Positions 25,881 through 56,632 of a DNA stretch of 64,000 bases are shown one piece after another. The notes below the pieces were generated by a model that saw nothing but the letters and a program-made list of their open reading frames with translations, did no database searches and was not told where the DNA came from. The translations under genes and the position numbers were made by a program. The number at the start of each line of letters is the position of its first letter. Position 1 is the stretch's first letter. The DNA lies in the IMG/VR virus record IMGVR_UViG_3300023174_000040, positions 1 through 64,000 of that record; one strand, given 5' to 3'.

Positions 25881-28136
25881 TTAGTTTGCTGGACAACAAG
25901 TTACTGCGACATCGCAGTAGTCAAAATTCGGCACTTCTCTTGCCGCACAATTCCATCCGGGGAGACTATCCATGAAAATAGATGTGCCCCCACAAGGAAC
26001 ATAAAACATTTGATATCCTGTACACCCCCCACAGCCCATGACCCAGGCGCCGTTCCAATAATGAGAGCAATTCTCACAGGACTGCTCAGAACAGGAAATA
26101 TTTGTATTAACCCAAACATATTCTCCCGGGTTATTATAGCCTGGTCTTGGTCCCGGTGTTTTTCCGTTTCCTGAAAAGTCGCATTCATTCCCAAGTTCGT
26201 GATATGCGTTACACCACAATGTTTTCCGACAAGACTCTTCTGACACACATCTTTTAACTCCTTCTCCAACATCGCAGCAAACAAGCTCGCCATCACAGTC
26301 GATCGTGTTTACACACGGCGCTGGCGTTGTGGTTGTTGTCAAGGAAATACACTCGCAATTTGACCCAGCTCTTATTTGTCCTTCTGGGCAAGGGTCGTAA
26401 CAATTTTCATCCACAAGAGAAAAACATGGTACTTTTCCTTCTGGGCATTCACAATTGCATCCATCCATGGGATTAGGAAAAACCTTGCCACCAGTGCAAT
26501 TTGGGCAACACTCGCAAGTCAATGGATTCAAGGTCTCCCCCTCCGGGCAAGTTTTTTGCACACTTATTTCATTTAGATAACTATAGAGAAGCGCAATAGA
26601 AGCTGCTAATTCTTGTAATCTAGTAGCTAAGGTTTTTTCATTCATTTCAAGTATGGATTGCTTAATAAATAAGTCAGCTTCAGCACTCTGTTTTATGGAT
26701 TCTCGAGTGCTTAGTTCCATTTCTTTTGCAATCACGTCCTCAGCTTTTACGTCATACTGTCGCTGCAGATTTTTTGCTTTCTCCATTCGCTCTAGAATAA
26801 TTTTGCGTATTCTATTGTCTTCATCTATTAGTTTATTTAATTCATGCCAAATAGGGTCGTTTTCTACATCGATCGTTACTCCGCTTTTGCTTAGCTCATT
26901 AATTATTTCTCGTAGTTTATTTATTTCATCATCTAGGCTATTTTTTCTGGCTATTGCGCTATTTATCTGAGCGACGAGATTGTTTATATCATCCATTAAA
27001 GCGGCCATTTGCGATCTTAATTGACTAATTCTGGTCGCCAGGGCTCTTATAGCAGCTATTGCATCATCAACTATAGCAATTAAACCTTTTATTATACTTT
27101 TAAGGTCAAATATGCTTTTCATTATAGCGCAAATGCCAGCTTTGGCCGCCGACACGCCAGAAGCAGCCCCAATTATTAGATCAATAGTTATCTGCGAAGG
27201 CTCCCAACAACCGCATGTTCCGCCAAGCAATCTTGGTGGCCCTATTCCATCCTCTGTTATCGCCCAGTTACCCCTGGTTTGATTTCCAGGGCAGGGCTCG
27301 GGTGGTGTAACAGTTAATCTAAAGTCGCACTGTCCTTGTCCTGGCCCCCATGCGTTAGGTGGCGGATAAGAGCCAATCATAAACGGGCTCAAAGAATTCA
27401 CAACGCCTGATATTTTTCCCTCTATCGCTTCTGCAGTTACATCTTCATAAGAAACTTCTTCTAATTCTTCGTAATATTTAAGATGTATTATTGCGGGGTC
27501 ATCTTCTGGATTTATATTTGAATCATTAAATGAAATTGTTATATTGCCACTAAATTCAGCATCGGTGTTTATATCGTAAATTGATATCTCACTAGATTCA
27601 GAACTTACTTTCTCAAATGTTACCTCACCTGCTTTGGTTATATTTTCAAAAGTTAATTCAACGTTATTATCGCTTGATGAGATTTGAATTTGCGTACCTA
27701 GTCCCAGACGCAAGTTATCTTTTGAGCTTGTTACTAGAATATCAAATTCTTTTCTTGTATGATATTTTGCCCCAGAGTAGTTGACCCCAACTTTATATGA
27801 AATTCCTGGCCTGTGGTAGAATATTTGATTGCTTTTAAGTTTATTTCCTTCTATCACAAATTTATCATTATCGTTTTGGCCAACAAATTCAGAATAGAGA
27901 GTGAACACCCCATTTTCGTTTTTATCTACTGTTAATGTTCCAACCTCAGTCCCGCTCTCCTGAAGCTCTTCTATTTCATTATTGGATAATGATAGATTAC
28001 ATTCTTTTTTTACTGGGTGCGATAATTTTTCAGATTGATCACAAGATATAGAAACAACTGGTACCCATGCATTCTTTACATTGGACCATTCTACTGTTCG
28101 TATAATTCCATCTTTGCCTTTGCACCTAAATGACAT
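25881..28136 (-). CDS. modular protein: cadherin-like + beta-sandwich + hydrophobic/coiled-coil insert + CxC repeats
   Basis: LSNNEI.E....GT.VGTL...DNDKF.IEGN.L; SLSPF; about 210 aa helical segment; CPEGETLNPLTCEC repeats. Confidence 0.8.
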   Translation of the reverse strand: MSFRCKGKDGIIRTVEWSNVKNAWVPVVSISCDQSEKLSHPVKKECNLSLSNNEIEELQESGTEVGTLTVDKNENGVFTLYSEFVGQNDNDKFVIEGNKLKSNQIFYHRPGISYKVGVNYSGAKYHTRKEFDILVTSSKDNLRLGLGTQIQISSSDNNVELTFENITKAGEVTFEKVSSESSEISIYDINTDAEFSGNITISFNDSNINPEDDPAIIHLKYYEELEEVSYEDVTAEAIEGKISGVVNSLSPFMIGSYPPPNAWGPGQGQCDFRLTVTPPEPCPGNQTRGNWAITEDGIGPPRLLGGTCGCWEPSQITIDLIIGAASGVSAAKAGICAIMKSIFDLKSIIKGLIAIVDDAIAAIRALATRISQLRSQMAALMDDINNLVAQINSAIARKNSLDDEINKLREIINELSKSGVTIDVENDPIWHELNKLIDEDNRIRKIILERMEKAKNLQRQYDVKAEDVIAKEMELSTRESIKQSAEADLFIKQSILEMNEKTLATRLQELAASIALLYSYLNEISVQKTCPEGETLNPLTCECCPNCTGGKVFPNPMDGCNCECPEGKVPCFSLVDENCYDPCPEGQIRAGSNCECISLTTTTTPAPCVNTIDCDGELVCCDVGEGVKRCVSEESCRKTLWCNAYHELGNECDFSGNGKTPGPRPGYNNPGEYVWVNTNISCSEQSCENCSHYWNGAWVMGCGGCTGYQMFYVPCGGTSIFMDSLPGWNCAAREVPNFDYCDVAVTCCPAN

Positions 28137-30081
28137 TTTTATCCTTTTTGCTTAATAAAAAATCACTAAATGTTTTTTGTGTATACTCTGGTTTTGGTTT
28201 GACTATCTTTGGCAAAGTGTTGAATTCTTTGTCTCTCTTAGCCAAATCCCCCTTGACAGTTAGATCAAATATTTGGCTCAATCTCTTCATATAAGCATCC
28301 CAATTTTTATCAAGTTGTTTTATTTGGGCTATTATCTTAGATTTATTGTTATAGTCTAGGTGCTGGAAACTCTTGGAAAATTTAACGTAAACATATCCTG
28401 TTAGTTTCCGGTTAGTTCCACTGTGCCAACCTTGTGTGGTGTTTTTAGGCATGTACAAAATTATGCTTTTAGGATCAATAAATGGGATTGCTTTTACCGA
28501 AGGGTTGTTAAAGATTTCATCTTTTAGCACGCCTAGATATATGTCGTATTCACGATCAATTTTAACTGGAGAGCTATTTGGTCCGTCTATTGGATAATCT
28601 TTTAGATAACCTATTTTTTCCGGGCTACTATACATTGTGATGTCGCCTTCTTCATCATCGATTTCTACTTCAAAGTTTTTAAAGTCGAAATCAGTTTTTG
28701 GGCTTTTCATGTAACCCTCTTTTATCAATTTTGCATAAACTTTTTGAACATGAGTTTCATAGTTTTTGTCTAGAACATCTATGTAATCTAAAAATTGTTC
28801 TAATGCTGTGAGTTGATCATTTGCACGATCTTCATCATCTATGGATAGATTTACTACGTGATATTCTTTTTTGCCTTGTTGATGATCATCCCAATTAATA
28901 TCACTTATTGAGTATATATCAATTGATCTTTTTATCATACTCTCTAGATCTCTACCATCCCTCCAATTTTCTCTTGCTTTTTCAAATTTATCAGTAGTTT
29001 CCCTGGTTGGTATTGTAAAACTCACACTTGCACTATAATGTAAATACGCTCCGCCTTCTCCATCAAAATCATCAGTAACATCATGATAAACATGAAAATG
29101 TTTCCAGTTAGCACTATGTTCTCTTATTTGTTGTTCTGCTAACTCCTCAATATCATCTGCACTAGTTGGATCTTTACGTTCTTCTTTTTCATCCTTGCTA
29201 GTTTTTCTTGCGCCCGCAAATTTTTTATCAAAAAATTCTCCCCAAATTTTGTCTGCGGGAGTGTCTTGATAAGTTCCGCCTTTTAGATCAAACTTATCGT
29301 AATCTTCTTCTGGGTTTATGTCTTTTATAACATCTGATTGAGCGGATTTGGCCCAGTTTTTAACAGCATCGTAAAATCCTATATGATCTATGCCATACGT
29401 GCTAATCTCGGGGGCCAGCAGATCTATTTCACCTTTGTTAAATCTTCTAAGTCTCAATCTTTCAAGTGGAACTATTCCGTCTATTTTTCTGTCTTTGTCT
29501 TTGAATAATTCAGATTTTTGTATATCCACACCAGCTAAATCTGAGTTCTTAACAACATAAGCTATAGCACCACCAGTTCTTGCTTCTTGTTTAGCGCATT
29601 TAAAATGAGATCTCTTTGGGTCATGGCAGCTTGTAATATTGTCATGGTCGCTCATTCTCACTAGATCAATTGGGCTTCTGCTTATTATGATGCTTGCGCC
29701 TGTTTGCGAATTTTTAAGATGAGAACTATTTTTTTGCCACCAATCCAATAATTCTTCGGCTTTATTTGATGGTGGTGTTTTAAAGTTTATTGCGCTCTGC
29801 AATGCTTTTCCTACTTTTTCTGGTCTATTTTTGTCGCCTTCTTTTGTTTTTATTTTTTTATAGACTATTTTTTTTTCAACCAAATCTCCGTAATCAACTG
29901 TGTAACCCAGATTTTCAAGCAGTTTTATTAATTCCTGCAGTTCTTTGTTTGAATCCAATGGTATCAATACTCTTAGTTTATCTTTGAATATATTATTAAA
30001 TAATAAGTCTCTCTCTGGTTCTATGCCGGCAAGACTTTTGATCTCATTGATATTTTGTTCTAGCCAATTCTTAAAATTCAT
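28126..30081 (-). CDS. large phage hypothetical protein with CTS-like N-terminus
   Basis: MNFKNWLEQ start; SRSPIDLVRMSD..ITSCH motif. Confidence 0.8.
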   Translation of the reverse strand: MNFKNWLEQNINEIKSLAGIEPERDLLFNNIFKDKLRVLIPLDSNKELQELIKLLENLGYTVDYGDLVEKKIVYKKIKTKEGDKNRPEKVGKALQSAINFKTPPSNKAEELLDWWQKNSSHLKNSQTGASIIISRSPIDLVRMSDHDNITSCHDPKRSHFKCAKQEARTGGAIAYVVKNSDLAGVDIQKSELFKDKDRKIDGIVPLERLRLRRFNKGEIDLLAPEISTYGIDHIGFYDAVKNWAKSAQSDVIKDINPEEDYDKFDLKGGTYQDTPADKIWGEFFDKKFAGARKTSKDEKEERKDPTSADDIEELAEQQIREHSANWKHFHVYHDVTDDFDGEGGAYLHYSASVSFTIPTRETTDKFEKARENWRDGRDLESMIKRSIDIYSISDINWDDHQQGKKEYHVVNLSIDDEDRANDQLTALEQFLDYIDVLDKNYETHVQKVYAKLIKEGYMKSPKTDFDFKNFEVEIDDEEGDITMYSSPEKIGYLKDYPIDGPNSSPVKIDREYDIYLGVLKDEIFNNPSVKAIPFIDPKSIILYMPKNTTQGWHSGTNRKLTGYVYVKFSKSFQHLDYNNKSKIIAQIKQLDKNWDAYMKRLSQIFDLTVKGDLAKRDKEFNTLPKIVKPKPEYTQKTFSDFLLSKKDKNVI

Positions 30082-30092
30082 ATAAATATGTA

Positions 30093-30121: not shown

Positions 30122-30154
30122 TTTATCTCAAGCCAGGTTAAAAAAGGTTTAATT

Positions 30155-31581: not shown

Positions 31582-31587
31582 CTTATT

Positions 31588-34776: not shown

Positions 34777-34784
34777 ATATATAA
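34777..34784 (+). promoter_or_regulatory. putative late promoter ATATATAA
   Basis: 4 nt before ATG 34789. Confidence 0.5.
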
Positions 34785-34788: not shown

Positions 34789-35235
34789 ATGCAATTCCGA
34801 GAATACCTAGAAATGGCAAGTTTCATCTTGCCTCATAAACTCAGAATAGGGGACAGTGTTGTTTCCGCTGTGGATATGCAGTTTGAAAAACATCCCGCCA
34901 CTATTAACAGTGATGGCAGGGTTATGAACCAAGGTTCCAAATTTATAGCAAAAGTTCCACAATCCCCAGATTACCTATCCTATGACGGTCAAGGAAGCAG
35001 TGAATTTGTTAAAAAAGATAATCTAATAGATTATATTAAAAAAGGTTTTCATAAAATACCAGATAATTGGTGGAAAAAAGCAAATTTTATAACAAATGAA
35101 AGTGTTGGAAGTTTTAGTGTTGTTACCTGCAAAGATTTAAATAATCCGAATTTTCAGATTTGGGGCGCACTCTCAGATTTGAAATGTAAAAATCAAAAAA
35201 AGCTTAAATTAAAGAACCTTATTGACAAAAAATAA
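34789..35235 (+). CDS. hypothetical protein with CTS-like N-terminus
   Basis: MQFREYLEM; ATG 34789 preferred over TTG 34786. Confidence 0.7.
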   Translation: MQFREYLEMASFILPHKLRIGDSVVSAVDMQFEKHPATINSDGRVMNQGSKFIAKVPQSPDYLSYDGQGSSEFVKKDNLIDYIKKGFHKIPDNWWKKANFITNESVGSFSVVTCKDLNNPNFQIWGALSDLKCKNQKKLKLKNLIDKK

Positions 35236-36143: not shown

Positions 36144-36392
36144 ATGTCATACAATAAAGAATACAGAAGAGAAAAGGCAATTGAACGTCAAGAATTAAGA
36201 AATAAGAGAAGCCACTCTGAGCAACTTGCTGTTTTAGACAAGATTTTTGGAGTAGGTTTGGGGGCAAAAAAAGAGCGTGAACGCTTAGCCGGACTTATTA
36301 GCAATAAAAGTAAACCCAAAAAAGAAATTGAGTCTGACGCTTCCGAAGAAAAGCCAAAGAAGAAGAGAAAGAAGAAAAATCAAGATAGTTGA
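36144..36392 (+). CDS. small basic phage protein (start revised)
   Basis: MSYNKE...; QLAVLDKIFGVGLGAKKERERL motif; SD AAAGGT. Confidence 0.7.
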   Translation: MSYNKEYRREKAIERQELRNKRSHSEQLAVLDKIFGVGLGAKKERERLAGLISNKSKPKKEIESDASEEKPKKKRKKKNQDS

Positions 36393-37927
36393 TGTAATTC
36401 ATCACTCAAATTATCGTTGAAATAGTCTTCGTTAAAACCTTCATATCCATGATATGGATGTGTGTAGTCTATTTTAACAAATTCTCTTAGTTCGTAATTA
36501 TCTTTGGCATGCTCTTTGTATATGTCTTTGAGATTTGATATAGCAATCTTTACCATTATATTTTCTGCATTTTCTACATCTGCATAGAATCCATTTTCAT
36601 CTTTTTGGGAAAGAGAGGACGTAACTCTTTGCCAAGCGTCTGATTGAGCCCCATCTTCATATCCAAGTCTACCCGCTGATTCTACTGCGCTGAGCAATTC
36701 TTTGTTGCGATTTATTGCACCCATAATATCATCTTCATCATATTCTTGCCCTTCTGAGGTTAGTATTTTTTTGATGATTTTGATGTTTTTGTCTGAAATA
36801 TGATCAAAAACATCTTTGATTGATATGTGGTCTATTTGTGGATCAAAATTATCCATAAAAGATAAATCTTCTACATCTCCCGAGTAGTATCTCTTTGCTC
36901 TCTCAGAAAAATCTTTAAAGCTATCAAATTTATCGACTACCAATTCATCTCCAACCACTGAGTCGAAAATATCATTAAACATTTCTTGTATTTTTATTAG
37001 TATTTCTCTTGGATTCTTTAATTTAAATATTTCTTTGTTAAAATATTGCTCAATATATAGATCGTAATTTAGACTTGGTTTTAATTTGTAAAGAGTTTGT
37101 TTTACACTTTCATCTAAATCATCCATAGAAAAATTGTTCTCTGGCTTGTATCCTCCACCCTTGACTGTCTTCACAATATTATTTTTTAGTAATTCTATTA
37201 TCGCTGGGTGGAATCTTATTGAGGGCTTGCTATTGTTTCTGCCTTTCATTTCTCCCAAAGCACCGTCGTTAATTATGAATGTTAAATATGCAACATTACT
37301 TGTGTCTCTTAACGATAGAATGTTATCGCCTTCTTTTCCTGCTGCATTTCCACAATGACCTGCACTTGCGCCTTCTTTTTCACATGATCTTTTATCTAAT
37401 AGAACCCATCTCCATCCATTCCAAGAAGATCCTAAGTGACTTAGATCCATAAATGTATCAGCCTCTGCCGCAGGTTTAGCTTTTGAAGTCTCAATTCTTT
37501 CGTGCCATTCTTCGCTTTCTTTTATTAGCATCTCAATAGTGAATTGGCTGTTGTTGAGTTTTGATTTTAAAATATTGTTGTCACTATTAGCCACTAAATA
37601 ATCAATTGTTTCATCTATTTGGTTGCCAAGTTGAGCTAACACACCTGGTTGTGCATATCTCATGAATCCCCTATTGTATGGTTTATTGTATGGGTTGTTG
37701 ACTGTTACACTTGTGAGTTTTTTGTAAAAATTATAAAAAAAGAAATTGATATATGTGGTAATGTATTTGGAACCTGGATTCACCCCTGATAAGATTCTAT
37801 TATTTATATAATTGACCACTTTTAGATAATCTGGGTCCGACTTTATTTCTTTGTCATTTTTTAGCAATTGCGCTATAGTTTGGCTCTCTATTAATAATAA
37901 CCATTCTGAAAATTTGATTTCTTCCAT
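36380..37927 (-). CDS. PcfJ-like domain phage protein (start revised to ATG 37927)
   Basis: CEKEG...GHCG...ILSLRD...LTF....GEMKGRNNSKP; MEEIKFSEWL start. Confidence 0.65.
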   Translation of the reverse strand: MEEIKFSEWLLLIESQTIAQLLKNDKEIKSDPDYLKVVNYINNRILSGVNPGSKYITTYINFFFYNFYKKLTSVTVNNPYNKPYNRGFMRYAQPGVLAQLGNQIDETIDYLVANSDNNILKSKLNNSQFTIEMLIKESEEWHERIETSKAKPAAEADTFMDLSHLGSSWNGWRWVLLDKRSCEKEGASAGHCGNAAGKEGDNILSLRDTSNVAYLTFIINDGALGEMKGRNNSKPSIRFHPAIIELLKNNIVKTVKGGGYKPENNFSMDDLDESVKQTLYKLKPSLNYDLYIEQYFNKEIFKLKNPREILIKIQEMFNDIFDSVVGDELVVDKFDSFKDFSERAKRYYSGDVEDLSFMDNFDPQIDHISIKDVFDHISDKNIKIIKKILTSEGQEYDEDDIMGAINRNKELLSAVESAGRLGYEDGAQSDAWQRVTSSLSQKDENGFYADVENAENIMVKIAISNLKDIYKEHAKDNYELREFVKIDYTHPYHGYEGFNEDYFNDNLSDELHQLS

Positions 37928-37933
37928 ATATAA
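37926..37933 (+). promoter_or_regulatory. putative late promoter ATATATAA between head-to-head genes
   Basis: CAT-ATATAATAT-ATG. Confidence 0.55.
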
Positions 37934-37936
37934 TAT

Positions 37937-38530
37937 ATGCTTAGTTTTAAAGATTTTATCAACCAATCTCCTGCTCCTATGGAATTAGTCCAGAATATTA
38001 AAGTTAGTGAAAACTTAAAATATCACTTAGATAACAAGATATCTCTCTCGGAGAATATTTTCAGGTTATACAGTGAGTCATATTTTGATCTTATTAAAGA
38101 GGTCAGAGAATTGTATAATAAAAATATGATATCTATCAATGATGATGACCTCGAATTGGTATCCAGCGATGCAGGTGAAACAGCCGACTATAATGGGAAA
38201 ACTATTTATTTGGATTGCCCCGTTATTGACAACGAAATAAATGAAGCTGAGTATAAGGGAAAAAAAGTTCAATTGGGAAAACCCCATAGAACTCCTGGTG
38301 AAAACAAAAAATTTGCTGTTTATGTCAAATCGCCATCAGGAAATATAAAGAAAGTTCGTTTTGGAGATCCTAATTTAAAGATTAAAAATAATAACCCATC
38401 CCGAGCCAAGAGGTTTCGTGCAAGACACAAGTGCTCAGAAAAGAAAGATCGGACTACTCCTGGTTATTGGTCGTGCAATATAGCGAGATTTGCTAAATCT
38501 GTTGGTCTGGTTAGCTCGAGGACATGGTGA
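37937..38530 (+). CDS. conserved-looking phage protein with basic C-terminal domain
   Basis: KKFAVYVK...VRFGDP...RFRARHKC...GYWSC; MLSFKDFI start. Confidence 0.75.
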   Translation: MLSFKDFINQSPAPMELVQNIKVSENLKYHLDNKISLSENIFRLYSESYFDLIKEVRELYNKNMISINDDDLELVSSDAGETADYNGKTIYLDCPVIDNEINEAEYKGKKVQLGKPHRTPGENKKFAVYVKSPSGNIKKVRFGDPNLKIKNNNPSRAKRFRARHKCSEKKDRTTPGYWSCNIARFAKSVGLVSSRTW

Positions 38531-49188: not shown

Positions 49189-49528
49189 CTTTGATGGGGG
49201 ATACCCTGTTTATATCCTAGATGACGACACAGTTCTTCATGTTAAAGAAGATAAAAACCATACAGAATTTTGGGAAGAAGTTGTCGCCCCAATAGTAGCC
49301 AATAAATACAAAGTATCACTCTCCAATATAATCAATCTTCCTTATTGCCAAAGAAGGGCGAGAATCGTTGGAGATTGTTTTTATTTTGGAGAAAAGATTA
49401 CAAAAAAGCTTCTTAAAAAGATCGAAAAGACAGTAGGGCATAAATTAAGACATGCCTACGATGAGCACGAAACTAGATGCGATATCAGCGTATCTGAGTT
49501 TCGTTCTAATATCCCATATCAACAATAA
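49181..49528 (+). CDS. hypothetical protein
   Basis: Overlaps the ligase stop. Confidence 0.65.
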   Translation: MSDFDGGYPVYILDDDTVLHVKEDKNHTEFWEEVVAPIVANKYKVSLSNIINLPYCQRRARIVGDCFYFGEKITKKLLKKIEKTVGHKLRHAYDEHETRCDISVSEFRSNIPYQQ

Positions 49529-50135
49529 CGTATCTGTCACCAGTATCAAGAATATTATCCTGATAGTCAGTTAGTGATATTCCATAAAATCTTTCGAGTT
49601 GGAATAGACTTTCGAACATTTCGGCTAATTTATTATGTTCTTCATCCGTATTCTTCTTGTATAGATTCAATATATCTTGCTGCTTTCTATTGCCACCAGA
49701 GTTCAGCCAGTCTTTGGCCTTTTGAAATTGTCCTCCAAGAGCAAGCATATAAAAATGATTAGTTGAATAATCCATTGGTTTTCCAATAATTTTTTCAACT
49801 AAAATCGCAAGAGATTCATTTGGCTTGGTTGCTACCGTTTTAAAACTTGTCTTATCTGGCCATGGATAAATTTTAACAACGTTGCTACTCTTTATCTTTT
49901 GAGCCCTTATTATATTTTGAACGTCTTCCTTGTGGGATGTTATTTTTATTAGGATATTGCTGTTTTCTGGATGTTGGTATAGAGTGGCAAAACTTCCTTC
50001 GTTTACTTTTACCAATGGTTTTTTGAACCCTAGCAGTTTGGCAACGTTCGTTTTTTGAGTTTGATGCTTTTGTGAAAAAGCTTTTTCGCTATCATCTTCT
50101 AATTCTTCTTTTATTATCCACTCTTTAAAATTCAT
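49506..50135 (-). CDS. protein-kinase-like fold protein with CTS-like N-terminus
   Basis: EGSFATLY (Gly loop), LIKIT, D-x4-NIL catalytic loop, IVDMG. Confidence 0.7.
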   Translation of the reverse strand: MNFKEWIIKEELEDDSEKAFSQKHQTQKTNVAKLLGFKKPLVKVNEGSFATLYQHPENSNILIKITSHKEDVQNIIRAQKIKSSNVVKIYPWPDKTSFKTVATKPNESLAILVEKIIGKPMDYSTNHFYMLALGGQFQKAKDWLNSGGNRKQQDILNLYKKNTDEEHNKLAEMFESLFQLERFYGISLTDYQDNILDTGDRYVIVDMGY

Positions 50136-50138
50136 ACA

Positions 50139-50146
50139 TTATATAT
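50139..50146 (-). promoter_or_regulatory. putative late promoter ATATATAA, 3 nt before the kinase ATG
   Basis: CAT-ATATAATGT-ATG on the - strand. Confidence 0.55.
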
Positions 50147-51059
50147 GAACATTAGATACGGAATTTGTTGTATTATTCTCTCGTTAGAGGAAAATGATCC
50201 TCCAAAGAAATTTCAAAGAATGACTTATAAAAAGTTTAGTCAAACTCCAAGAGAAGAGGCCGTGACTGAACTTAGCAAAAGAATACTCAATAATATTGAT
50301 GTTACATTCAATGCTATAAAGTATTGTAAAGAACGTAATTTTAATTATAGGCTAAGTAGCGACTTATTTTCATTGATAACGTATGATAAGGCCGATTTAT
50401 CGCTAGAGCAATTGCCGGATTATGATAAAATAATTGATCTTTTCAAGCAGATAAAAGAATATAATGCTGTGAACAGTGTTAGGATAAGCCTGCACCCTGA
50501 TCAATTCAATGTCCTTGCCAGCAAAGATGAAAATGCTTTATCAAGAACTATTAAGGAATTAAATTTTTATAGCTGGGTTATGGATCAAATTGGATGCTCT
50601 GCTGATTATAACTCCCCTATAAACCTTCATATAAATAACAATCAGGATAGTTGTGAGGAGATAATCGATAGGCTATCTGCTAGTTTAGATATATTGGATG
50701 ACAATTGCAGGTCTAGGATAGTTTTTGAGAATGACGATAAAACAAAGTGTTGGAGTGTAAAAAAACTATCTGGATTTTATTATAAAAAATTTAATTCGCC
50801 AATTACTTTCGACTTTCTCCATCACAAATGCCACCCGGACGGATTATCGGAGAAAGAGGCGTTCGAACTCTGCTGTCACTCTTGGGGCAGTTTTAAGCCC
50901 CTGTTCCACTACAGTGAGTCTCGGGATGAAAAGAATCCAAGAGCACACGCAGACTATCCTTCAAATATTCCCAGCTTTTACGACAGCGAAATTGACATAG
51001 ATTTTGAGTTTAAGAAAAAAGAAAAAGCTATTGAAAAATTCATTACTCTAAACCATTAG
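50145..51059 (+). CDS. uvsE: UV-damage endonuclease
   Basis: YRLSSDLF, SLHPDQFNVLAS, FENDD, TFDFLHH, PLFHYSES, AHADY. Confidence 0.92.
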   Translation: MNIRYGICCIILSLEENDPPKKFQRMTYKKFSQTPREEAVTELSKRILNNIDVTFNAIKYCKERNFNYRLSSDLFSLITYDKADLSLEQLPDYDKIIDLFKQIKEYNAVNSVRISLHPDQFNVLASKDENALSRTIKELNFYSWVMDQIGCSADYNSPINLHINNNQDSCEEIIDRLSASLDILDDNCRSRIVFENDDKTKCWSVKKLSGFYYKKFNSPITFDFLHHKCHPDGLSEKEAFELCCHSWGSFKPLFHYSESRDEKNPRAHADYPSNIPSFYDSEIDIDFEFKKKEKAIEKFITLNH

Positions 51060-52581
51060 ATATTTTATAATTATCTGTTAAGGTTTCCATTATATCTTTA
51101 TTTTCATAATTCTCAGATCTGACTGAATCTGGATGTGGCATATGAATTATACATGGTTTGTTATGGTTTAAATATTTTCTTTCCAAACCAATGCCAGTTA
51201 ATCTATTGAATATATCGCAATCTTCATATCCATAATTTTTCATCAATTCGTTATATCCGCCTATTTTTATCAAATTTTCTCTGTGAACATAAAGGAATCC
51301 GTGTAAATATCTAATAAATCCCATATCATTGTCGATCAGGAAATCTTCCCAGTTACCTGTTAGAAACTCATTTTTTTTAATTTTATATTCTTGAAAAAAG
51401 TCGTAATATGGATTTAAAATATAATCCACATCCATTTTTATAATCAAGTCGCCACAGGTATTTTTTATTGCTAAATTTGGTGCTTTTACAACTGAAAAGT
51501 ATTTTTCATTTTCTACCCTGATTACTTTAATCCGATTATCCAACTTTGATAGGTAAGATATGTCTTCATCTGAGGACCAATCTACTATTACATATTCTTT
51601 TATATCTTTATGTTTTATCCATGATTGAATAGATATTTTCAGCATATCAGTTCTGTTCTTAACAGAACAAATCAATGAAATAGTTTCTTCTTTTTTTGGA
51701 ACTAATTTTACTTCTTGTTTTTTTGCTATAATTAATGGAATTTTATTTATCTTTGAGGAGATGTATGAAAAGCTACTCCAATTTGATCCTATTATTTTTT
51801 TTGTTCCAGACAATAACATCATATCAATCAATGCATCTTTTTGACCTGGTTTACTTTCTAAATGATTTATGTTTTTAAAAAACTTTTTATCTTTGTTCCA
51901 TAATAAATTTGGAAATTTATTTACAAAATAGTTGTTGGTATCCTCACAGTCTGTTGATAAGAAAAAATTACAATCTGGATTTGCTTCCATTTCTTCATTT
52001 ATTTTAATCACAAATGACTCATTATCGGAAATGCCAAACTTGTCTTTCCATGGACTTGTTGTTGAGTCTCCTCTTCTTATGTGAATCCCTATGGTATTTT
52101 TATTAAAAGACTTTCTTATATTCTTTATTTTATTTTGTATTTCTGGTTTGAATTTTAAACTTTTAATGAAGTCATACTTGCCATAATTGTGCCACAAAGA
52201 ACTTAGCATGTATTCAATGCAAGAATCGCCACAATAACAAAAAGAATTTTTTTTAATAAAATCAATTATTGAATTTTGTTCAATTTCTTGAACATATTCG
52301 TCTGGATTTTTTTCATTTTTGTAAACCACCCTGTCTAGATTAAAATTATCTTTGCTGAATTCTTCATATTCTTTTTCATTTATGAATTTTAATTTTGTTT
52401 TTTGAAACAAGTCGTAGAATTTCTCATCAGACCACCCTGCTCCCCCACCCCAGAGAACTCTTAATTCGAAATTATTCTCTTCTGCAAAATTGTAAAAAGA
52501 ATTCAAAGTGCGCAATCTATTTGCCAATCCATGTTTTACTTTGATGCAAATAATTCTATTAGAAGGCTCCATATCTCTCAT
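51043..52581 (-). CDS. bifunctional glycosyltransferase: alpha-fucosyltransferase-like (GT11/NodZ type) + GT2/GT7-like
   Basis: GLANRL, IGIHIRRGD, FLSTD, SSFS; then VIVDWSS, MDVD, GGYNE..KNYGYED. Confidence 0.8.
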   Translation of the reverse strand: MRDMEPSNRIICIKVKHGLANRLRTLNSFYNFAEENNFELRVLWGGGAGWSDEKFYDLFQKTKLKFINEKEYEEFSKDNFNLDRVVYKNEKNPDEYVQEIEQNSIIDFIKKNSFCYCGDSCIEYMLSSLWHNYGKYDFIKSLKFKPEIQNKIKNIRKSFNKNTIGIHIRRGDSTTSPWKDKFGISDNESFVIKINEEMEANPDCNFFLSTDCEDTNNYFVNKFPNLLWNKDKKFFKNINHLESKPGQKDALIDMMLLSGTKKIIGSNWSSFSYISSKINKIPLIIAKKQEVKLVPKKEETISLICSVKNRTDMLKISIQSWIKHKDIKEYVIVDWSSDEDISYLSKLDNRIKVIRVENEKYFSVVKAPNLAIKNTCGDLIIKMDVDYILNPYYDFFQEYKIKKNEFLTGNWEDFLIDNDMGFIRYLHGFLYVHRENLIKIGGYNELMKNYGYEDCDIFNRLTGIGLERKYLNHNKPCIIHMPHPDSVRSENYENKDIMETLTDNYKISNGLE

Positions 52582-52617
52582 AAGAGGATTGAATTTTTAA
52601 TTTTTTACCCCTCTCGG

Positions 52618-52634
52618 TTTCCTTTTGGTACGGT
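52618..52634 (+). promoter_or_regulatory. 17-bp motif, copy 8
   Basis: TTTCCTTTTGGTACGGT in a divergent intergenic gap. Confidence 0.75.
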
Positions 52635-52669
52635 TGATAACGGGAAGGTCCACAGAGAATTTGTCTTAA

Positions 52670-53263
52670 ATGTTTAAAAAAATAATTGCACCCCTGTCGT
52701 TGCTGTTTATTTGTTGTTTTTCCTTAAAAGCCCAGGAAGAATCGACAGATCGAATTACTACCACACAAGACGATAATGGTTATTTCAACACTATTGAAGA
52801 AATTTGCGAAGCAGCAAACGCAGAAGATCACAATAAATATCTTTCTCTTCGTGTGAGTTCCACTAAAAGAGAGAAGAGAGAAATTGCACTGTTCTTTTTG
52901 TCTAATAAAATTAATATATCTATATTAGACAAAAAGTTAATAGATATTAAGGATGATTTTGCCGAGATAGCAGTTGAATACAAAATGACTGTTAATGAAA
53001 CAAACAATATTATTGTGAGCTTACTTGCAATGAAAAAAATAGACTCTGATTGGAAGCTAATCAAAGAGACGGTGATTAGTAAGAAACTGGAATCCCGGTG
53101 TAGGAGTGGAAATTGTCGTGCTGTTGATAATGATTTTTCTAACCCTCCTAGACTAAATTGCCCCAATGGTAAATGTCGTGCCGTGGGCGATAGTCCTTTG
53201 TCTTTGCCTCCAAAGCCTAATTGTGCTAACGGCAGGTGCAATCTTCTTATGAGAATTGAGTAA
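52670..53263 (+). CDS. secreted NTF2/SnoaL-like protein with three CxxGxC repeats
   Basis: Sec signal MFKKIIAPLSLLFICCFSLKA; DWKLIKETVI; CRSGNC, CPNGKC, CANGRC. Confidence 0.6.
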   Translation: MFKKIIAPLSLLFICCFSLKAQEESTDRITTTQDDNGYFNTIEEICEAANAEDHNKYLSLRVSSTKREKREIALFFLSNKINISILDKKLIDIKDDFAEIAVEYKMTVNETNNIIVSLLAMKKIDSDWKLIKETVISKKLESRCRSGNCRAVDNDFSNPPRLNCPNGKCRAVGDSPLSLPPKPNCANGRCNLLMRIE

Positions 53264-53293
53264 AAAAAATAAAATAGTTTAATAAATAACCTC

Positions 53294-53458
53294 ATGAAGG
53301 TTATTTGTGAAAACAATGATTATTATCCTGCCGCTCTTAAGACCGGCAACGTCTATGATGTCTATATTGCAAAAGATTCTACTTTTATCATAATTGATGA
53401 ATTTCTTGAAAATCAAGAATATCCAAGAAATATATTCAAGATAATGGAACATTCTTGA
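53294..53458 (+). CDS. 54-aa hypothetical protein (not in the ORF track)
   Basis: MKVICENNDYYPAALKTGNVYDV...IIDE...YP; fits the + strand operon. Confidence 0.65.
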   Translation: MKVICENNDYYPAALKTGNVYDVYIAKDSTFIIIDEFLENQEYPRNIFKIMEHS

Positions 53459-53480
53459 CAATTTGATTATAAGCTTTAAA

Positions 53481-53888
53481 ATGTTCAGGATGAACTTATC
53501 TAAAGTAATAGAAATTAGTTATGCCTTGGCGGGCAAACACAGGGGAAATCATAGGTGCCGCCATTTTAGTTTTATTTATGAAAGAAATACATTAATCTCT
53601 GTGGGGATGAACAGCGCAAAAACTCATCCATTAAATTTAAAATATAATTATATCAACAAGCAAAAAGATAAAATTAGTGATATTGTTGGCACCCATTCTG
53701 AATTGAGTGCAGTTCTAAAATTAGGCTATGAAGATTGTAGTGGACTAACAATAATAAATACAAGAATCAACCGCAGAAACGAGGTTGATTATAGTCGCCC
53801 GTGCATAGGATGCATGGATATGTTGACTCAACTTGGCTTTAAAAGAATTTTATACACAACTAAAGACAAGACGTTTTTAGAGATATGA
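53481..53888 (+). CDS. zinc-dependent cytidine/dCMP-deaminase-like protein (start 53481 or 53490)
   Basis: HSE and PCIGC motifs. Confidence 0.8.
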   Translation: MFRMNLSKVIEISYALAGKHRGNHRCRHFSFIYERNTLISVGMNSAKTHPLNLKYNYINKQKDKISDIVGTHSELSAVLKLGYEDCSGLTIINTRINRRNEVDYSRPCIGCMDMLTQLGFKRILYTTKDKTFLEI

Positions 53889-54940
53889 TAGATAAACTAA
53901 TAGATGATGGTTACGTTAATGTAGTGAAGCATCCTACTGACGAACTATTTATCTACAATTATACTGCTCGGGCACAATATGAAAATAAGTGGGCAGAATA
54001 TCCTGAGATTAGGAAATATAGAGGTCTGATATTGGACCCTTCAGGACAAATAGTGGGTAAATCTTTTGATAAGTTTCATAACTTAGAAGAATATTCTGAA
54101 AATAGTATTCTCGGTCCATTGCCGGATTACAACGATTTCGAAGTTTATGACAAACTAGACGGCAGCCTGGGTATATCGTATAAATACTCTGGGGGTGTTG
54201 CTATAGCAACAAGAGGCAGTTTCACATCAGAGCAGTCCTTTTGGGCCACCAACCATCTAAATAAAAAATATCCAAACTTTAACCCGCCAGATGATTTGAC
54301 TTTTCTTTTTGAGATATTATATAAAAAAAATAGAATAGTTGTTGATTATGATTACGAGGGATTAGTTTTACTTTCTGTTTTTAGAAAAGAAATAGAATTA
54401 TCTCGAGAAGAAATAGAAGTTATTTCAAAAGAGTATGATTTTGAATTAGTGGAAAAGTTTGATGGGATAAAAGATTTTGATAATATAAGAACTCTTTATG
54501 CAAGAGATAATGCCGAAGGCTTTGTGATAAAGTTCGATAATGGATTAAGGGTAAAATTAAAATATGAAGAATATTGTCGATTGCATAAAATAGTCACAGG
54601 TGTAAATTCTAAGATAATATGGGAAATGCTAAAAGAGAACAAAAACTTTGATGAAATTTTAGATCATGTCCCCGATGAATTTTACGATTGGGTAAAAAAC
54701 ACAAGAGACGCCATACAGGAAAAATATGAAGGAATAATTGAATCTGCGGAAGAAAAGAAAGAAAGTATTAAAAATTTAACAAGAAAAGAGCAGGCAGAAA
54801 TTATACTTCGGGATTGCAGAGACTATTCCGGTGTGGTATTCTCTCTGCTTGATAATAGGCCAGATAAGGCAAAAGAAATAAGTTGGAAATTAAGCAAGCC
54901 AGAAAATGATAAGCCGTTTAAGGATGAACAACAAGGCTGA
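53885..54940 (+). CDS. T4 Rnl1-like RNA ligase
   Basis: DKLDGS, ATRGSF, FEIL...NRIVVDY, EGFVI, RVKLK motifs. Confidence 0.9.
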   Translation: MIDKLIDDGYVNVVKHPTDELFIYNYTARAQYENKWAEYPEIRKYRGLILDPSGQIVGKSFDKFHNLEEYSENSILGPLPDYNDFEVYDKLDGSLGISYKYSGGVAIATRGSFTSEQSFWATNHLNKKYPNFNPPDDLTFLFEILYKKNRIVVDYDYEGLVLLSVFRKEIELSREEIEVISKEYDFELVEKFDGIKDFDNIRTLYARDNAEGFVIKFDNGLRVKLKYEEYCRLHKIVTGVNSKIIWEMLKENKNFDEILDHVPDEFYDWVKNTRDAIQEKYEGIIESAEEKKESIKNLTRKEQAEIILRDCRDYSGVVFSLLDNRPDKAKEISWKLSKPENDKPFKDEQQG

Positions 54941-54954
54941 GATAAGGGGGATTT

Positions 54955-55542
54955 ATGATTAATATTAAACCACGCCTCCAACCAGAAGATTTTGAATTCT
55001 GGTTTAGTGTTCGTGGCTTTAGCAACTATGAAAACTACTGCTCGGAAACTAAAGAAAAAATTTCAACCGATCCCAGGTTCGCTTTTAAATATGCGGAAAA
55101 ATTTGGGCCTCTTCCAGAAGAGTGTGAATCTGTATTTTTAAAGAGTCCCGAATATGCTTATAATTATTCTTATTGGATAAAAAATAAAAGACTTTCTCCT
55201 AAACTTGAGAAAGTTTTTTCCCGATGTCCTAAGTGGGCTTATATTTATGCAAAAAAAATAATTAAAGGTAGATTGCCAAAAAGCATAGAAAAAGCTTTCT
55301 TAAAGTCACCCGAATATGCACTGCAGTACGCATACCTCATTGGTAAGCTGGAAGAAGATTTAGAATTTGTTTTTTTAGAAGATTGTGAACTTGCTCTAAA
55401 ATACGCAAGAGAGATAATAAAGAAAGGATTCTCGGGAAAAATGCACAATGCATTATTTTTAAAATTTTCTTTTGAGAAAAATAATGGTTATCAAAAACTT
55501 CATCTATCTCAGTACTTTCAAGAGTTTCCACAACCAACCTAG
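54955..55542 (+). CDS. helical-repeat hypothetical protein
   Basis: About 25-aa repeats P..A..YA...I..RL...E..F. Confidence 0.7.
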   Translation: MINIKPRLQPEDFEFWFSVRGFSNYENYCSETKEKISTDPRFAFKYAEKFGPLPEECESVFLKSPEYAYNYSYWIKNKRLSPKLEKVFSRCPKWAYIYAKKIIKGRLPKSIEKAFLKSPEYALQYAYLIGKLEEDLEFVFLEDCELALKYAREIIKKGFSGKMHNALFLKFSFEKNNGYQKLHLSQYFQEFPQPT

Positions 55543-55547
55543 TTCAA

Positions 55548-56402
55548 TCAACCTAATAAAATACTTATATTTTTTAATAACTCCGTATCATTTGCGATTT
55601 CTGCTTCGTTTATAAAATTATCTATATTTAAAACTTTTTGTCTTAATGTAAGGGTGTTAGTTTTTATTTTTTTTTGTTTTGGAGTTCCACTGATATCAAA
55701 GAAGTTTTTGGGATCCTCTCCTAAAAATTTAATAATATTCTTATAAAAAGAAATATAATTTTCTCCTGTTAAATTTTCATAAGTCACATGTTGATAATCA
55801 ATATTGTTCCTTAAACAGAAGTTAAATACTATTTCTTCTTCTTCTAATAAATCTTTTTTATACTCAATAAATTCTTTGTAAAATACATTGATTCCAATTG
55901 AATGAAATTTTATTGATTCTAATTCTGAATTATAATTTTTTGTAATGCCTGCTGTTTTGTGCGAAATATATTTCAAAAAGATATTATTACGAGTCAAATG
56001 TATAATTTTTATATTATTATTTTTTATATATTTTAAAAAATTGCTGATCCCGATATGGTCTCCTGGCGGCAATTTATTATTGGTTCCTATGTGATGACTA
56101 AAAAATACCTTAAATCCAAAATGTTCCGACTGTTTTATCTCCTCCCAAATCTTTAAATATTCAATAAAGTTTCTGTTTCTGTTTCCTATAAATTGATTCG
56201 GATCACTACCAAATAAGATTTCACATCTTTTTCTAACTTCTGAATTGTTTTCTGCTAAATTCAATAAATTTAAACACGGTCTTACTTTGTATGGATGAAA
56301 TATCTCATACTGGCAACGTATGCTTTTTTGACTATCGAGGAACTCACATAGCATCTGAGACCCACTTCTGGGTGTTGTAACTATTATAAATTTTTTTGCC
56401 AT
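55548..56402 (-). CDS. Stf0-like sulfotransferase
   Basis: TTPRSGSQML (5'-PSB), EIFH, IIHLTRNN, TYENL. Confidence 0.75.
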   Translation of the reverse strand: MAKKFIIVTTPRSGSQMLCEFLDSQKSIRCQYEIFHPYKVRPCLNLLNLAENNSEVRKRCEILFGSDPNQFIGNRNRNFIEYLKIWEEIKQSEHFGFKVFFSHHIGTNNKLPPGDHIGISNFLKYIKNNNIKIIHLTRNNIFLKYISHKTAGITKNYNSELESIKFHSIGINVFYKEFIEYKKDLLEEEEIVFNFCLRNNIDYQHVTYENLTGENYISFYKNIIKFLGEDPKNFFDISGTPKQKKIKTNTLTLRQKVLNIDNFINEAEIANDTELLKNISILLG

Positions 56403-56440
56403 AATACCAATGCGGATTATTTGCTAAAAAACCGGTAGAG

Positions 56441-56632
56441 TCATCGACTCTTTTTCTTCTTCTTTTTCTTTTTCTTTTTGAGGCTATTTCTACTGGCCTT
56501 TACATATACTTGATCTGGGCCTGTTTGGTTGGCTAGTGGTGGATATTGGCCCACACCGCCATATTGCGGGGGATATATTCCCACTATCTCTTCTCCAAAT
56601 ATTTTCTTTACATATTCTTTAAAAGTTATCAT
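56441..56632 (-). CDS. small protein with CTS-like N-terminus and poly-Lys tail
   Basis: MITFKEYV...YPPQYGGVGQYPP...K10SR. Confidence 0.65.
   Translation of the reverse strand: MITFKEYVKKIFGEEIVGIYPPQYGGVGQYPPLANQTGPDQVYVKASRNSLKKKKKKKKKKSR

What the first reader, a model, noticed from the sequence alone, without database searches (positions are those of the whole stretch)
28126..56632. T4 capsid-targeting-like N-termini mark candidate injected proteins, including a kinase
Six genes start with a similar peptide: MNFKNWLE (30081), MQFREYLE (34789), MEEIKFSEWL (37927), MLSFKDFI (37937), MNFKEWIIKE (50135) and MITFKEYV (56632). These resemble the T4 internal-protein targeting sequence MKTYQEFIAE, and all adjoin a late-type motif. 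They may be packaged in the head and ejected, which would make the kinase-like and PcfJ-like proteins immediate host-takeover or anti-defence effectors.
Basis: inference. Interest (0 to 1): 0.62.

Follow-up and report, generated by a model that had tools for sequence, protein, structure and literature searches.

The report
Capsid-targeting tags in a huge phage
A huge uncultured freshwater phage distantly related to T4 puts nearly the same 10-12-residue N-terminal "address label" that T4 uses to load proteins into its head onto at least 29 unrelated proteins, so this phage probably packs, and possibly injects, an unusually large protein toolkit; no virion data exist to confirm it.

Summary
All six N-termini are as written. 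Genome-wide (323 kb IMG/VR record, about 64% complete), 29 genes start with M-x(1-3)-F-x-[E/D/N]-[W/Y/F]-[L/I/V], usually followed by Glu. The strict core occurs 13 times at N-termini against 0.18 expected. Without the first 14 residues the 29 proteins form 27 unrelated families. Codon choice in the tag matches genome usage, so selection acts on the peptide.

The phage encodes a T4-type prohead protease, a scaffold-like protein and a gp23-type capsid protein, with five tagged genes around them. T4 IPI starts MKTFKEF and IPII/IPIII start MKTYQEFIAE. The invariant positions here (4, 7, 8, then Glu) are the ones shown by mutation to direct T4 targeting and processing.

Related contigs carry the tag on dozens of further families. 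The 209-aa protein has a protein-kinase-like fold. "PcfJ-like" for the 515-aa protein is only a lead. The upstream TATATA(A/T) element also precedes baseplate and virion genes, but late timing is inferred.

Best reading: a T4-type capsid targeting sequence, greatly expanded (confidence about 0.68). Packaging, cleavage and ejection are untested.

The parts
28126..30081 (-). Tagged gene 1, 651 aa, starts MNFKNWLEQNINE. Tag codons 30046-30081. Function unknown.
   Evidence: No Pfam or PHROG match. Atlas gives weak leads only. I-N-E at residues 11-13 fits a [LIV]-x-E site.
30082..30090 (-). Variant promoter-like element CATATTTAT abutting the ATG of gene 1.
34789..35235 (+). Tagged gene 2, 148 aa, starts MQFREYLE. 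Basic (pI 9.4). Function unknown.
34778..34784 (+). TATATAA element starting 11 nt before the ATG of gene 2. No Shine-Dalgarno sequence.
36380..37927 (-). Tagged gene 3, 515 aa, starts MEEIKFSEWLLLIE and then a conserved domain. Member of a large family found on huge-phage contigs. PcfJ-like only as a lead.
   Evidence: 152 homologues. Close ones all carry tag + L-x-E + the conserved start TIAQxLK. AF2 pLDDT 89 with a weakly modelled N-terminus. No PDB fold match. Atlas fold TM 0.71 by the target over 158 residues to a cluster that is 21% PcfJ. HMMER and hhalign are negative.
37925..37939 (.). Divergent start region CATATATAATATATG. The two start codons are 9 bp apart around a palindromic TATATA element that could serve both genes.
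37937..38530 (+). Tagged gene 4, 197 aa, starts MLSFKDFINQ. The C-terminal half matches phrog_7595 (unknown function). Basic.
49506..50135 (-). Tagged gene 5, 209 aa, starts MNFKEWIIKE. Minimal protein-kinase-like enzyme: Gly-rich loop GSFATLY, Lys64, D190/N194, and DMG at the C-terminus.
   Evidence: 24 homologues and alignment A1, with tag F3/W6 at least 90% conserved. AF2 pLDDT 84, residues 5-28 below 50. Foldseek matches to aminoglycoside phosphotransferases and protein kinases, probability about 1.0, E 5e-5. Pfam YrbL only 16 bits, below the cut-off.
50133..50147 (.). Second divergent start region CATACATTATATATG, with a 9-bp gap between the ATGs of gene 5 and of 50145-51059.
50145..51059 (+). 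Untagged divergent partner, 304 aa, endonuclease family (phrog_8420). It shows that the upstream element does not require the peptide tag.
56441..56632 (-). Tagged gene 6, 63 aa, starts MITFKEYVKK. Lys-rich tail. Shares a G-x-YPPQ(Y/W) stretch with tagged gene 218787-219230 of the same genome.
56637..56643 (-). TATATAA element starting 11 nt before the ATG of gene 6.

Best explanation
The shared N-terminal peptide is a T4-type capsid targeting sequence (CTS). It is a short amphipathic propeptide with consensus M-K-x-F-K/N-E-W-L-x-x-x-E. It would bind the scaffolding core of the assembling prohead, so that any protein carrying it is enclosed. The T4-type (S77, gp21-like) prohead protease would then clip it after a nearby Glu, leaving the mature protein inside the head with the DNA. 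In this huge freshwater phage the label has spread to at least 29 unrelated genes in a ~64%-complete genome. Six lie in the window. Five flank the protease-scaffold-capsid genes. The cargo includes a protein-kinase-like enzyme, a P-loop kinase, two CCA/poly(A)-type nucleotidyltransferases and a 971-aa SNF2 helicase. Shown here: the tag, its enrichment, its modularity, its match to the T4 CTS at the mutationally defined positions, the presence of the T4-type head machinery, and clade-wide conservation. Inferred: binding to the core, cleavage, presence in virions, ejection into the host, and any early takeover or anti-defence role.
For: 1. N-terminal specificity: 13 observed against 0.18 expected in this genome. 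In 80 related loci, 32 observed against 0.38 expected among ORFs of at least 150 aa.
2. Modularity: 29 tagged proteins form 27 BLASTP-unrelated families once 14 residues are removed. The exact MKTFNEWL-coding pattern occurs 18 times in IMG/VR, always at an ORF start, on 15 unrelated proteins. A scrambled control pattern gives 0.
3. Peptide-level selection: synonymous codon use in the tag equals genome usage, for example F TTT:TTC 21:8 against 72:28%. W/Y/F and L/I/V interchange.
4. T4 comparison: IPI starts MKTFKEF and IPII/IPIII start MKTYQEFIAE. The review PMC9026906 reports that targeting depends on residues 4 and 7 and processing on residues 8 and 10. In 100 pooled tags, position 4 is F in 100%, position 7 is W/Y/F in 100%, position 8 is L/I/V in 99%, and Glu lies at positions 9-13 in 88% against 29% of controls. 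[LIVM]-x-E occurs in 55% against 15%.
5. Machinery: Peptidase_S77 at E 2e-28 with 32% identity to gp21; Gp23 at E 3e-90; an E/A-rich 298-aa protein lies between them. Tagged genes sit at 284295, 285407, 286997, 294104 and 295100 around them.
6. Orthologues keep the tag: 17 of 17 for head-module genes. F3/W6 are at least 90% conserved in kinase orthologues, followed by a variable linker before the domain.
7. Models place the tag in a low-confidence N-terminal helix off the folded domain. The AAA_33 domain of the P-loop kinase begins at residue 16.
8. Control in T4: the word MKT[F/Y]xEF at a gene start marks all three internal proteins plus one uncharacterised ORF, 61.1.
9. No tagged gene lies behind a sigma70-type -35/-10 promoter (0 tagged among only 8 such genes). 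The TATATA[AT] element also precedes baseplate wedge and virion structural genes.
Against: There is no proteomic, structural or expression evidence for this uncultured phage, and no RNA runs hold it. The Glu is not in a fixed register (most often position 12, not 10), and 45% of tags lack a canonical [LIVM]-x-E. Some cargo types look like ordinary intracellular enzymes: CCA-type nucleotidyltransferases and an SNF2 helicase here, NUDIX and FMN reductase in relatives. Packaging about 30 kinds of protein would be unusual for a T4-type head. The upstream element is not exclusive to structural genes, and no gp55-type late sigma factor was found in the partial record. The nearest named relative, LR756511.1, shows only two variant tags in 41 kb around its capsid gene. 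In T4 the same word also heads gp61.1, which is not known to be packaged.
Confidence: 0.68

Rival explanations
1. The peptide is a functional N-terminal module, but for something other than head packaging. It could be a docking helix for a phage chaperone, a localisation signal to a replication or assembly site, or a timed-degradation tag recognised by a phage or host protease.
For: The cargo list is dominated by nucleic-acid and nucleotide enzymes that normally act in the cytoplasm. The Glu register is loose. T4 gp61.1 carries the word without known packaging. The complex prediction gave no verdict.
Against: The positions conserved here are the ones that mutagenesis ties to prohead targeting and gp21 processing in T4. 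The T4-type protease and scaffold are present, and tagged genes cluster round them. Enrichment of Glu and [LIVM]-x-E right after the tag fits a gp21-type cut.
Confidence: 0.17
2. The similarity reflects a DNA-level cassette: promoter, start codon and first codons. It would be kept because it drives leaderless expression or serves as a recombination joint for shuffling genes, and the encoded peptide itself would have no function.
For: The tag co-occurs with the TATATA[AT] element 10-13 nt before the ATG: 11 of 25 tagged against 16 of 361 untagged genes. Divergent pairs share a 9-20 bp start region. Internal-protein loci of T-even phages are known from the literature as sites of cassette exchange (my own knowledge, not checked here).
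Against: Synonymous codons in the tag follow genome usage and aromatic and aliphatic residues interchange, so the constraint is on the peptide. Many tagged genes, here and in relatives, have an ordinary Shine-Dalgarno leader instead of the abutting element. Sixteen untagged genes use the same abutting element.
Confidence: 0.1
3. Chance, or compositional bias of AT-rich gene starts (K, N, F, E, I, L codons).
For: The genome is 36% G+C, and these residues have AT-rich codons.
Against: The internal rate of the same 5-mer gives 0.18 expected against 13 observed. The scrambled DNA control gives 0 against 18. Trp (TGG) is the commonest residue at position 7. Loci of other T4-like phages (LR756508.1, Stenotrophomonas CM1) show none.
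Confidence: 0.02

Closest known systems
Phage T4 internal proteins IPI, IPII and IPIII with their capsid targeting sequence (Mullaney and Black 1996, as summarised in PMC9026906 and PMC3012670)
   Same: Both have an extreme N-terminal 10-19-residue propeptide on otherwise unrelated proteins. The words are nearly identical: T4 MKTFKEF and MKTYQEFIAE against the consensus MK(T/S/N)F(K/N)EWL here. Both have an aromatic at positions 4 and 7, an aliphatic at 8, an acidic residue at 6 and a Glu shortly after. The phage has a gp21-type protease, a scaffold and a gp23 capsid protein.
   Different: There are 29 or more tagged genes in a partial genome against 3-4 in T4. Cargo reaches 971 aa and includes recognisable enzymes rather than small basic proteins. 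The Glu is most often at position 12. Many tagged genes have a promoter-like element abutting the ATG. The capsid protein is only about 31% identical to gp23. Nothing here has been shown experimentally.
T4 Alt (ADP-ribosyltransferase packaged in the head and injected)
   Same: Alt is an enzyme delivered with the DNA. Its N-terminus, MELITELFDE, has the same hydrophobic-x-E-hydrophobic-hydrophobic-x-E layout and is removed by gp21 (PMC5694885). It is the precedent for a tagged kinase acting at the start of infection.
   Different: No tagged protein here is related to Alt. Injection and host targets are unknown.
Ejection and inner-body proteins of phiKZ-like giant phages (SPN3US, phiKZ, 201phi2-1)
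   Same: These are large heads carrying dozens of internal proteins. They are processed after Glu by a related prohead protease, and the propeptides are thought to target proteins to the prohead (PMC5694885).
   Different: Those propeptides are mostly over 100 residues and share no short common word. Their cleavage motif is A/S-x-E. Their capsid lineage and genome organisation differ. Here a short T4-like word is reused many times.

Membership tests
T4-type CTS-bearing internal (head-packaged) proteins | Short propeptide at the extreme N-terminus with targeting determinants at residues 4 and 7 (aromatic in T4 IPIII) | tested here: met
   Position 4 is F in 100 of 100 pooled tags. Position 7 is W 58, Y 25, F 17. 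The T4 positions come from PMC9026906. T4 sequences were read from NC_000866.
T4-type CTS-bearing internal (head-packaged) proteins | Processing determinants: an aliphatic residue at 8 and a Glu cut site shortly after ((L/I)-x-E for gp21) | tested here: inconclusive
   Position 8 is L/I/V in 99%. Glu lies at 9-13 in 88% against 29% of controls, and [LIVM]-x-E occurs in 55% against 15%. In the genome itself the figures are 18 of 29 against 95 of 340, p = 3e-4. The register varies, and cleavage itself was not observed.
T4-type CTS-bearing internal (head-packaged) proteins | The same tag on otherwise unrelated proteins (portable address) | tested here: met
   27 families among 29 proteins. 43 further tagged families in relatives, leaving out the portal. 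15 unrelated proteins behind the exact octapeptide.
T4-type CTS-bearing internal (head-packaged) proteins | The phage assembles its head on a T4-type core with a gp21 (S77) protease, a scaffold and gp23 | tested here: met
   PF03420 96 bits and PF07068 300 bits. BLASTP to T4 gp21 32% and gp23 31%. T4-type portal at 312466-314976, identified through relatives. The scaffold is assigned only by position and composition.
T4-type CTS-bearing internal (head-packaged) proteins | Physical presence in proheads or virions, removal of the tag, ejection with the DNA | not testable with these tools
   The phage is uncultured. Only DNA metagenome runs hold it. The complex prediction gave no verdict.
T4-type CTS-bearing internal (head-packaged) proteins | Expression with the late (morphogenetic) genes | tested here: inconclusive
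   The TATATA[AT] element is shared with baseplate wedge and virion structural genes, but also with methyltransferase-like and endonuclease genes. No gp55 homologue was found in the partial record. 0 tagged among the 8 genes with a sigma70-type promoter.
Protein-kinase-like superfamily (for 49506-50135) | Gly-rich loop, ATP-anchoring Lys, catalytic Asp/Asn, metal-binding D-x-G, bilobal fold | tested here: met
   Invariant G47, K64, D190, N194 and D206 in 24 homologues. AF2 pLDDT 84. Foldseek matches to APH and ePK structures, probability about 1.0, TM about 0.4. The protein ends at the D-M-G motif, so it lacks the usual activation segment and C-lobe end. Activity and substrate are unknown.
Protein-kinase-like superfamily (for 49506-50135) | Match to a curated kinase family model above threshold | tested here: not met
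   Only YrbL-PhoP_reg, 16 bits against a cut-off of 31.5.
PcfJ (PF14284) (for 36380-37927) | Match to the Pfam model at the gathering score | tested here: not met
   No hit for the protein or for any of 39 homologues. hhalign against the genome's own PcfJ-domain protein gives probability 0.9%.
PcfJ (PF14284) (for 36380-37927) | Fold or feature similarity to PcfJ-containing clusters | tested here: inconclusive
   Atlas features 0.94 with 182 shared. Atlas fold TM 0.71 by the target over 158 residues to a cluster that is 21% PcfJ, and TM 0.3 to a cluster that is 89% PcfJ.

The most novel reading that the evidence does not exclude
The T4 capsid-targeting word has survived almost unchanged across the deep split between T4 and a clade of huge freshwater phages. 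There it would address dozens of unrelated proteins per genome to the head: two kinds of kinase, tRNA nucleotidyltransferases, an SNF2 helicase, and NUDIX and ParB-like proteins in relatives. Such phages would inject a pre-made enzyme toolkit. The tag would also let the injected proteome of uncultured T4-type phages be read from sequence alone, and would give a ready-made list of candidate first-minute takeover and anti-defence factors.
Probability: 0.45. Interest if true: 0.75.

Novelty: new member of a known kind. Interest (0 to 1): 0.6.

Why it matters
If the tag works as in T4, a ten-residue word predicts which proteins of uncultured T4-type phages travel inside the capsid. Proteins injected with the DNA act before any phage gene is expressed, so they are prime candidates for counter-defence and host takeover. 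A set of about 30, including kinases and tRNA-end repair enzymes, would be much larger and more enzymatic than T4's three small internal proteins plus Alt. It would also show that the tag-core interaction is one of the most conserved features of T4-type head assembly. That makes the tag a candidate portable packaging label beyond T4. The claim can be tested directly by viral-fraction metaproteomics or by reconstitution with the phage's own scaffold and protease.

Tried and rejected
- Complex prediction of the scaffold-like protein (290009-290905) with residues 1-40 of tagged protein 294104-294571: no answer, score 0.01. This is not evidence either way.
- Search for a T4 gp55 late sigma factor in the record: nothing found. 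The record is about 64% complete, so this is uninformative.
- I first took 287517-289304 for the portal by position. PHROGs found nothing, and the real T4-type portal is 312466-314976, identified through relatives. Its N-terminus matched my loosened pattern by coincidence and was excluded from the tag set.
- PcfJ membership of 36380-37927: pairwise BLASTP to the genome's own PcfJ-domain protein, HMMER on 40 homologues and hhalign were all negative. Foldseek against the PDB gave no match at E <= 0.001.
- BLASTP between the 651-aa and 515-aa tagged proteins: unrelated.
- Head-region loci of LR756511.1, LR756508.1 and Stenotrophomonas phage CM1: no strict tags. LR756511.1 has two variants. The tag is therefore not uniform across all large T4-like phages.
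- Literature: the held papers describe a CTS for T4, T-evens, P1 and phiKZ-like phages. None describes this tag family in huge metagenomic phages. Absence from this library does not prove it is unpublished.
- No genetic code other than table 11 was needed or used.

Full report
WHAT THE WINDOW IS. The window is the first 64 kb of a 323,267-bp linear IMG/VR virus record with 35.8% G+C, estimated about 64% complete. The record encodes a T4-type prohead protease (Pfam Peptidase_S77, E 2.4e-28, 32% identical to T4 gp21). It also encodes a gp23-type major capsid protein (Pfam Gp23, E 2.9e-90, 31% identical to T4 gp23). The capsid protein is 78.6% identical to that of LR756511.1, an uncultured 595-kb phage. 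It has 320 relatives in IMG/VR on contigs of up to 533 kb. The DNA occurs in lake and freshwater metagenomes from 13 studies, and no RNA run holds it. This is therefore a huge, uncultured freshwater phage only distantly related to T4.

CHECK OF THE OBSERVATION. I made a crude call of 386 genes for the whole record. The core F-[KRS]-[EDN]-[WYF]-[LIV] falls within the first seven residues of 13 proteins. It occurs only 7 times in the remaining ~91,000 residues, so 0.18 would be expected at N-termini. Scanning every ATG with a looser pattern and inspecting gene starts gives 29 tagged genes. The consensus is M-K/N-x-F-K/N-E/D-W/Y/F-L/I/V, usually followed within four residues by Glu. Six tagged genes are in the window. 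The others lie at 86.5, 145, 161, 188-189, 205-236, 279-295 and 308-316 kb of the record.

THE TAG IS A PORTABLE PEPTIDE, NOT A SHARED DOMAIN OR A DNA ELEMENT. After removing the first 14 residues, the 29 proteins form 27 families with no BLASTP similarity at 1e-3. Synonymous codon use at tag positions equals genome-wide use: Phe TTT:TTC is 21:8 against 72:28%, and Leu uses four codons. Trp, Tyr and Phe interchange at position 7, and Leu, Ile and Val interchange at position 8. Tagged genes occur both with a promoter-like element abutting the ATG and with ordinary Shine-Dalgarno leaders. Sixteen untagged genes use the abutting element. Selection therefore acts on the peptide.

CLADE-WIDE CONSERVATION. 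In 80 related loci (966 kb around the capsid gene), 84 ORFs carry the strict tag. Among ORFs of at least 150 aa there are 32 against 0.38 expected. Excluding the portal, which my loosened pattern picked up by coincidence, these fall into 43 families. Detectable orthologues of the head-module tagged genes keep the tag in 17 of 17 cases, even where the rest of the protein has diverged. A DNA pattern encoding exactly MKTFNEWL has 18 matches in IMG/VR. All are at ORF starts and they precede 15 unrelated proteins. The scrambled control MKTWNEFL has none. Pooling 100 distinct tags gives this profile:
- Position 4 is Phe in 100%.
- Position 6 is E/D/N in 97%.
- Position 7 is W 58, Y 25, F 17.
- Position 8 is L 67, I 21, V 11.
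- Glu lies at positions 9-13 in 88%, against 29% of control N-termini.
- [LIVM]-x-E occurs there in 55%, against 15% of controls.

COMPARISON WITH T4. Read from NC_000866, IPII and IPIII start MKTYQEFIAE and IPI starts MKTFKEF. Alt starts MELITELFDE. The review PMC9026906 summarises Mullaney and Black 1996. The first 10 residues of IPIII suffice for packaging, targeting depends mainly on residues 4 and 7, and processing depends on residues 8 and 10. Those are the invariant positions of the tag found here. As a specificity control, I scanned the whole T4 genome for ATG-x-x-[F/Y]-x-E-[aromatic-type codon]. Twelve matches were found. Four have the MKT[F/Y]xEF form and lie at annotated gene starts: ipI, ipII, ipIII and the uncharacterised 54-aa ORF 61.1. 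In the one phage whose head content is known, the word therefore marks the internal proteins.

CONTEXT IN THIS GENOME. Tagged genes at 284295, 285407, 286997, 294104 and 295100 surround this block of genes:
- 287517-289304, a 595-aa Glu-rich protein of unknown role.
- 289323-290012, the protease.
- 290009-290905, a 298-aa E/A-rich protein. I call it scaffold-like by position and composition only.
- 290950-292374, the capsid protein.
The capsid protein's own N-terminal ~47 residues contain four [L/I]-x-E sites ahead of the region that aligns with mature gp23. This is consistent with a conserved gp21-type specificity (inference).

WHAT THE TAGGED PROTEINS ARE. Most are unknown.
- 49506-50135: the 24 homologues keep a Gly-rich loop (GSFATLY), Lys64, D190/N194 and a terminal D-M-G motif. 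The AF2 model has pLDDT 84 and matches aminoglycoside phosphotransferases and protein kinases (Foldseek probability about 1.0, E 5e-5, TM about 0.4). Residues 5-28, which include most of the tag and the linker, are modelled with pLDDT below 50. 'Kinase-like' is therefore supported at fold and motif level, but not by any curated family model.
- 145754: an AAA_33 P-loop kinase whose domain begins at residue 16, directly after the tag.
- 205546 and 232139: PolyA_pol/CCA-type nucleotidyltransferases.
- 225763: a 971-aa SNF2-family helicase.
- In relatives, tagged proteins include NUDIX, FMN reductase and ParB_N domains.
- 36380-37927: this protein belongs to a family of more than 150 members found on huge-phage contigs. 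Close members all start with the tag, then L-x-E, then a conserved domain start. Distant members on other huge contigs start with different but similarly patterned peptides. This looks like a conserved cargo with clade-specific address peptides (inference). Its PcfJ-likeness is only a lead. The clear PcfJ domain of this genome is in an untagged gene at 78747-80072, outside the window.

THE UPSTREAM ELEMENT. TATATA[A/T], often preceded by C/A-A, starts 10-13 nt before the ATG of about 27 genes that lack a Shine-Dalgarno sequence. It lies within 20 nt of 11 of 25 tagged genes against 16 of 361 untagged genes. No -35 element accompanies it. The same element, at the same or a larger distance, precedes gp6-like and gp25-like baseplate wedge genes, two virion structural proteins and two giant RCC1-repeat proteins. 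It also precedes a methyltransferase-like gene and an endonuclease gene. Eight genes have classical sigma70-type -35/-10 promoters, and none of them is tagged. The element resembles the T4 late promoter TATAAATA (my own knowledge) and may be a late promoter giving leaderless or near-leaderless mRNAs, but timing is not shown. No gp55 homologue was found in the partial record.

MOST LIKELY MECHANISM. The tag forms a short amphipathic helix with F4, W7 and L8 on one face. This helix binds the scaffolding core during prohead assembly. The S77 protease then cuts after the following Glu, and the mature protein stays in the head with the DNA and can leave with it at infection. The sequence anatomy and the presence of the machinery are shown. 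Binding, cleavage, packaging and ejection are inferred by analogy with T4. I put this at about 0.68.

RIVALS.
- A peptide module with a different partner, such as a chaperone, a localisation signal or a degradation tag: about 0.17. The enzymatic, cytoplasmic-looking cargo and the loose Glu register favour it.
- A DNA-level expression or recombination cassette: about 0.10. Codon statistics and the separability of tag and promoter disfavour it.
- Chance: about 0.02. The controls exclude it.

KNOWN OR NEW. CTS-addressed internal proteins are a classic T4 feature, and T-even relatives are known to carry diverse proteins behind CTS-like peptides (PMC3012670, PMC9026906). The papers I could search describe nothing like a family of about 30 tagged genes, including enzymes, in huge metagenomic phages. 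I therefore file it as a new member of a known kind. Its scale, its cargo and the near-identity of the address word across a very deep phage divergence make it notable.

Noticed in passing
window 37925-37939 and 50133-50147; also G000 145361-145381, 218396-218421, 270242-270262: Five divergent gene pairs have their two ATGs only 9-20 bp apart, around a palindromic TATATA element (for example CATATATAATATATG). If the element is a promoter it must serve both directions and give leaderless mRNAs. About 27 genes have TATATA[AT] 10-13 nt before the ATG and no Shine-Dalgarno sequence, while other genes have a strong AAAGGAG.
   Followed up: partly
phage T4 NC_000866 18966-19130 (-), locus L155: The uncharacterised T4 ORF 61.1 (54 aa) starts with the same seven residues as internal protein I (MKTFKEF), encoded by the identical 21 nucleotides. 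It may be an unrecognised packaged protein or a remnant of cassette exchange.
   Followed up: no
L049:153-3938 (IMG/VR relative); own portal at G000 312466-314976 (-): In one relative the T4-type portal gene is 1261 aa and contains intein-splicing and LAGLIDADG homing-endonuclease domains, that is, an intein inside the portal. The copy in this genome is 836 aa.
   Followed up: no
proteins P0072-P0144 (homologues of window 36380-37927): Distant homologues of the 515-aa tagged protein, found on other huge contigs (340-584 kb), begin with different recurring peptides, such as M-I-I-D-Q-I-V-x-E-A-Q-N-Y-E-x-M-F and M-R-F-Q-E-F. They share the hydrophobic-x-acidic-hydrophobic-hydrophobic layout. These may be clade-specific variants of the address tag.
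   Followed up: partly
window 6455-10915, 11054-12160, 12241-16428: Two giant proteins (1486 and 1395 aa) carry RCC1-like repeats (150-bp period at 9458-10279). A 368-aa ORF repeats the first ~15 residues of the 1486-aa protein. All three are preceded by the TATATA[AT] element. They are possibly fibre or surface proteins.
   Followed up: partly
window 14456-14634, 16183-16360, 22498-22779, 24436-24500, 56929-57083, 60463-60548: Thr/Pro-rich 10-residue repeats (30-bp period, T-P-T-L-T-K-T-like) recur in at least six different large genes, like linker modules shared between them.
   Followed up: no
window 1-127: The record starts inside 8.5 perfect copies of a 15-bp tandem repeat, so the contig end is probably an assembly break in a repeat and not a genome terminus.
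   Followed up: no
window 56441-56632 and G000 218787-219230: Two tagged proteins share a Gly/Tyr/Pro-rich stretch (G-x-Y-P-P-Q-Y/W) right after the tag. The 63-aa one ends in a run of about 11 Lys encoded by mixed AAA/AAG codons, not a homopolymer.
   Followed up: partly
G000 78747-80072 (+), locus L123: This is the only clear PcfJ-domain protein of the record (PF14284, 38.5 bits). It is untagged and lies outside the window.
   Followed up: partly
window 21298-23103 and 23190-25091: Two adjacent ~600-aa genes appear to be paralogues. They share an identical internal stretch ([15 protein letters not shown]) and similar N-termini, and both are preceded by the TATATA element.
   Followed up: no
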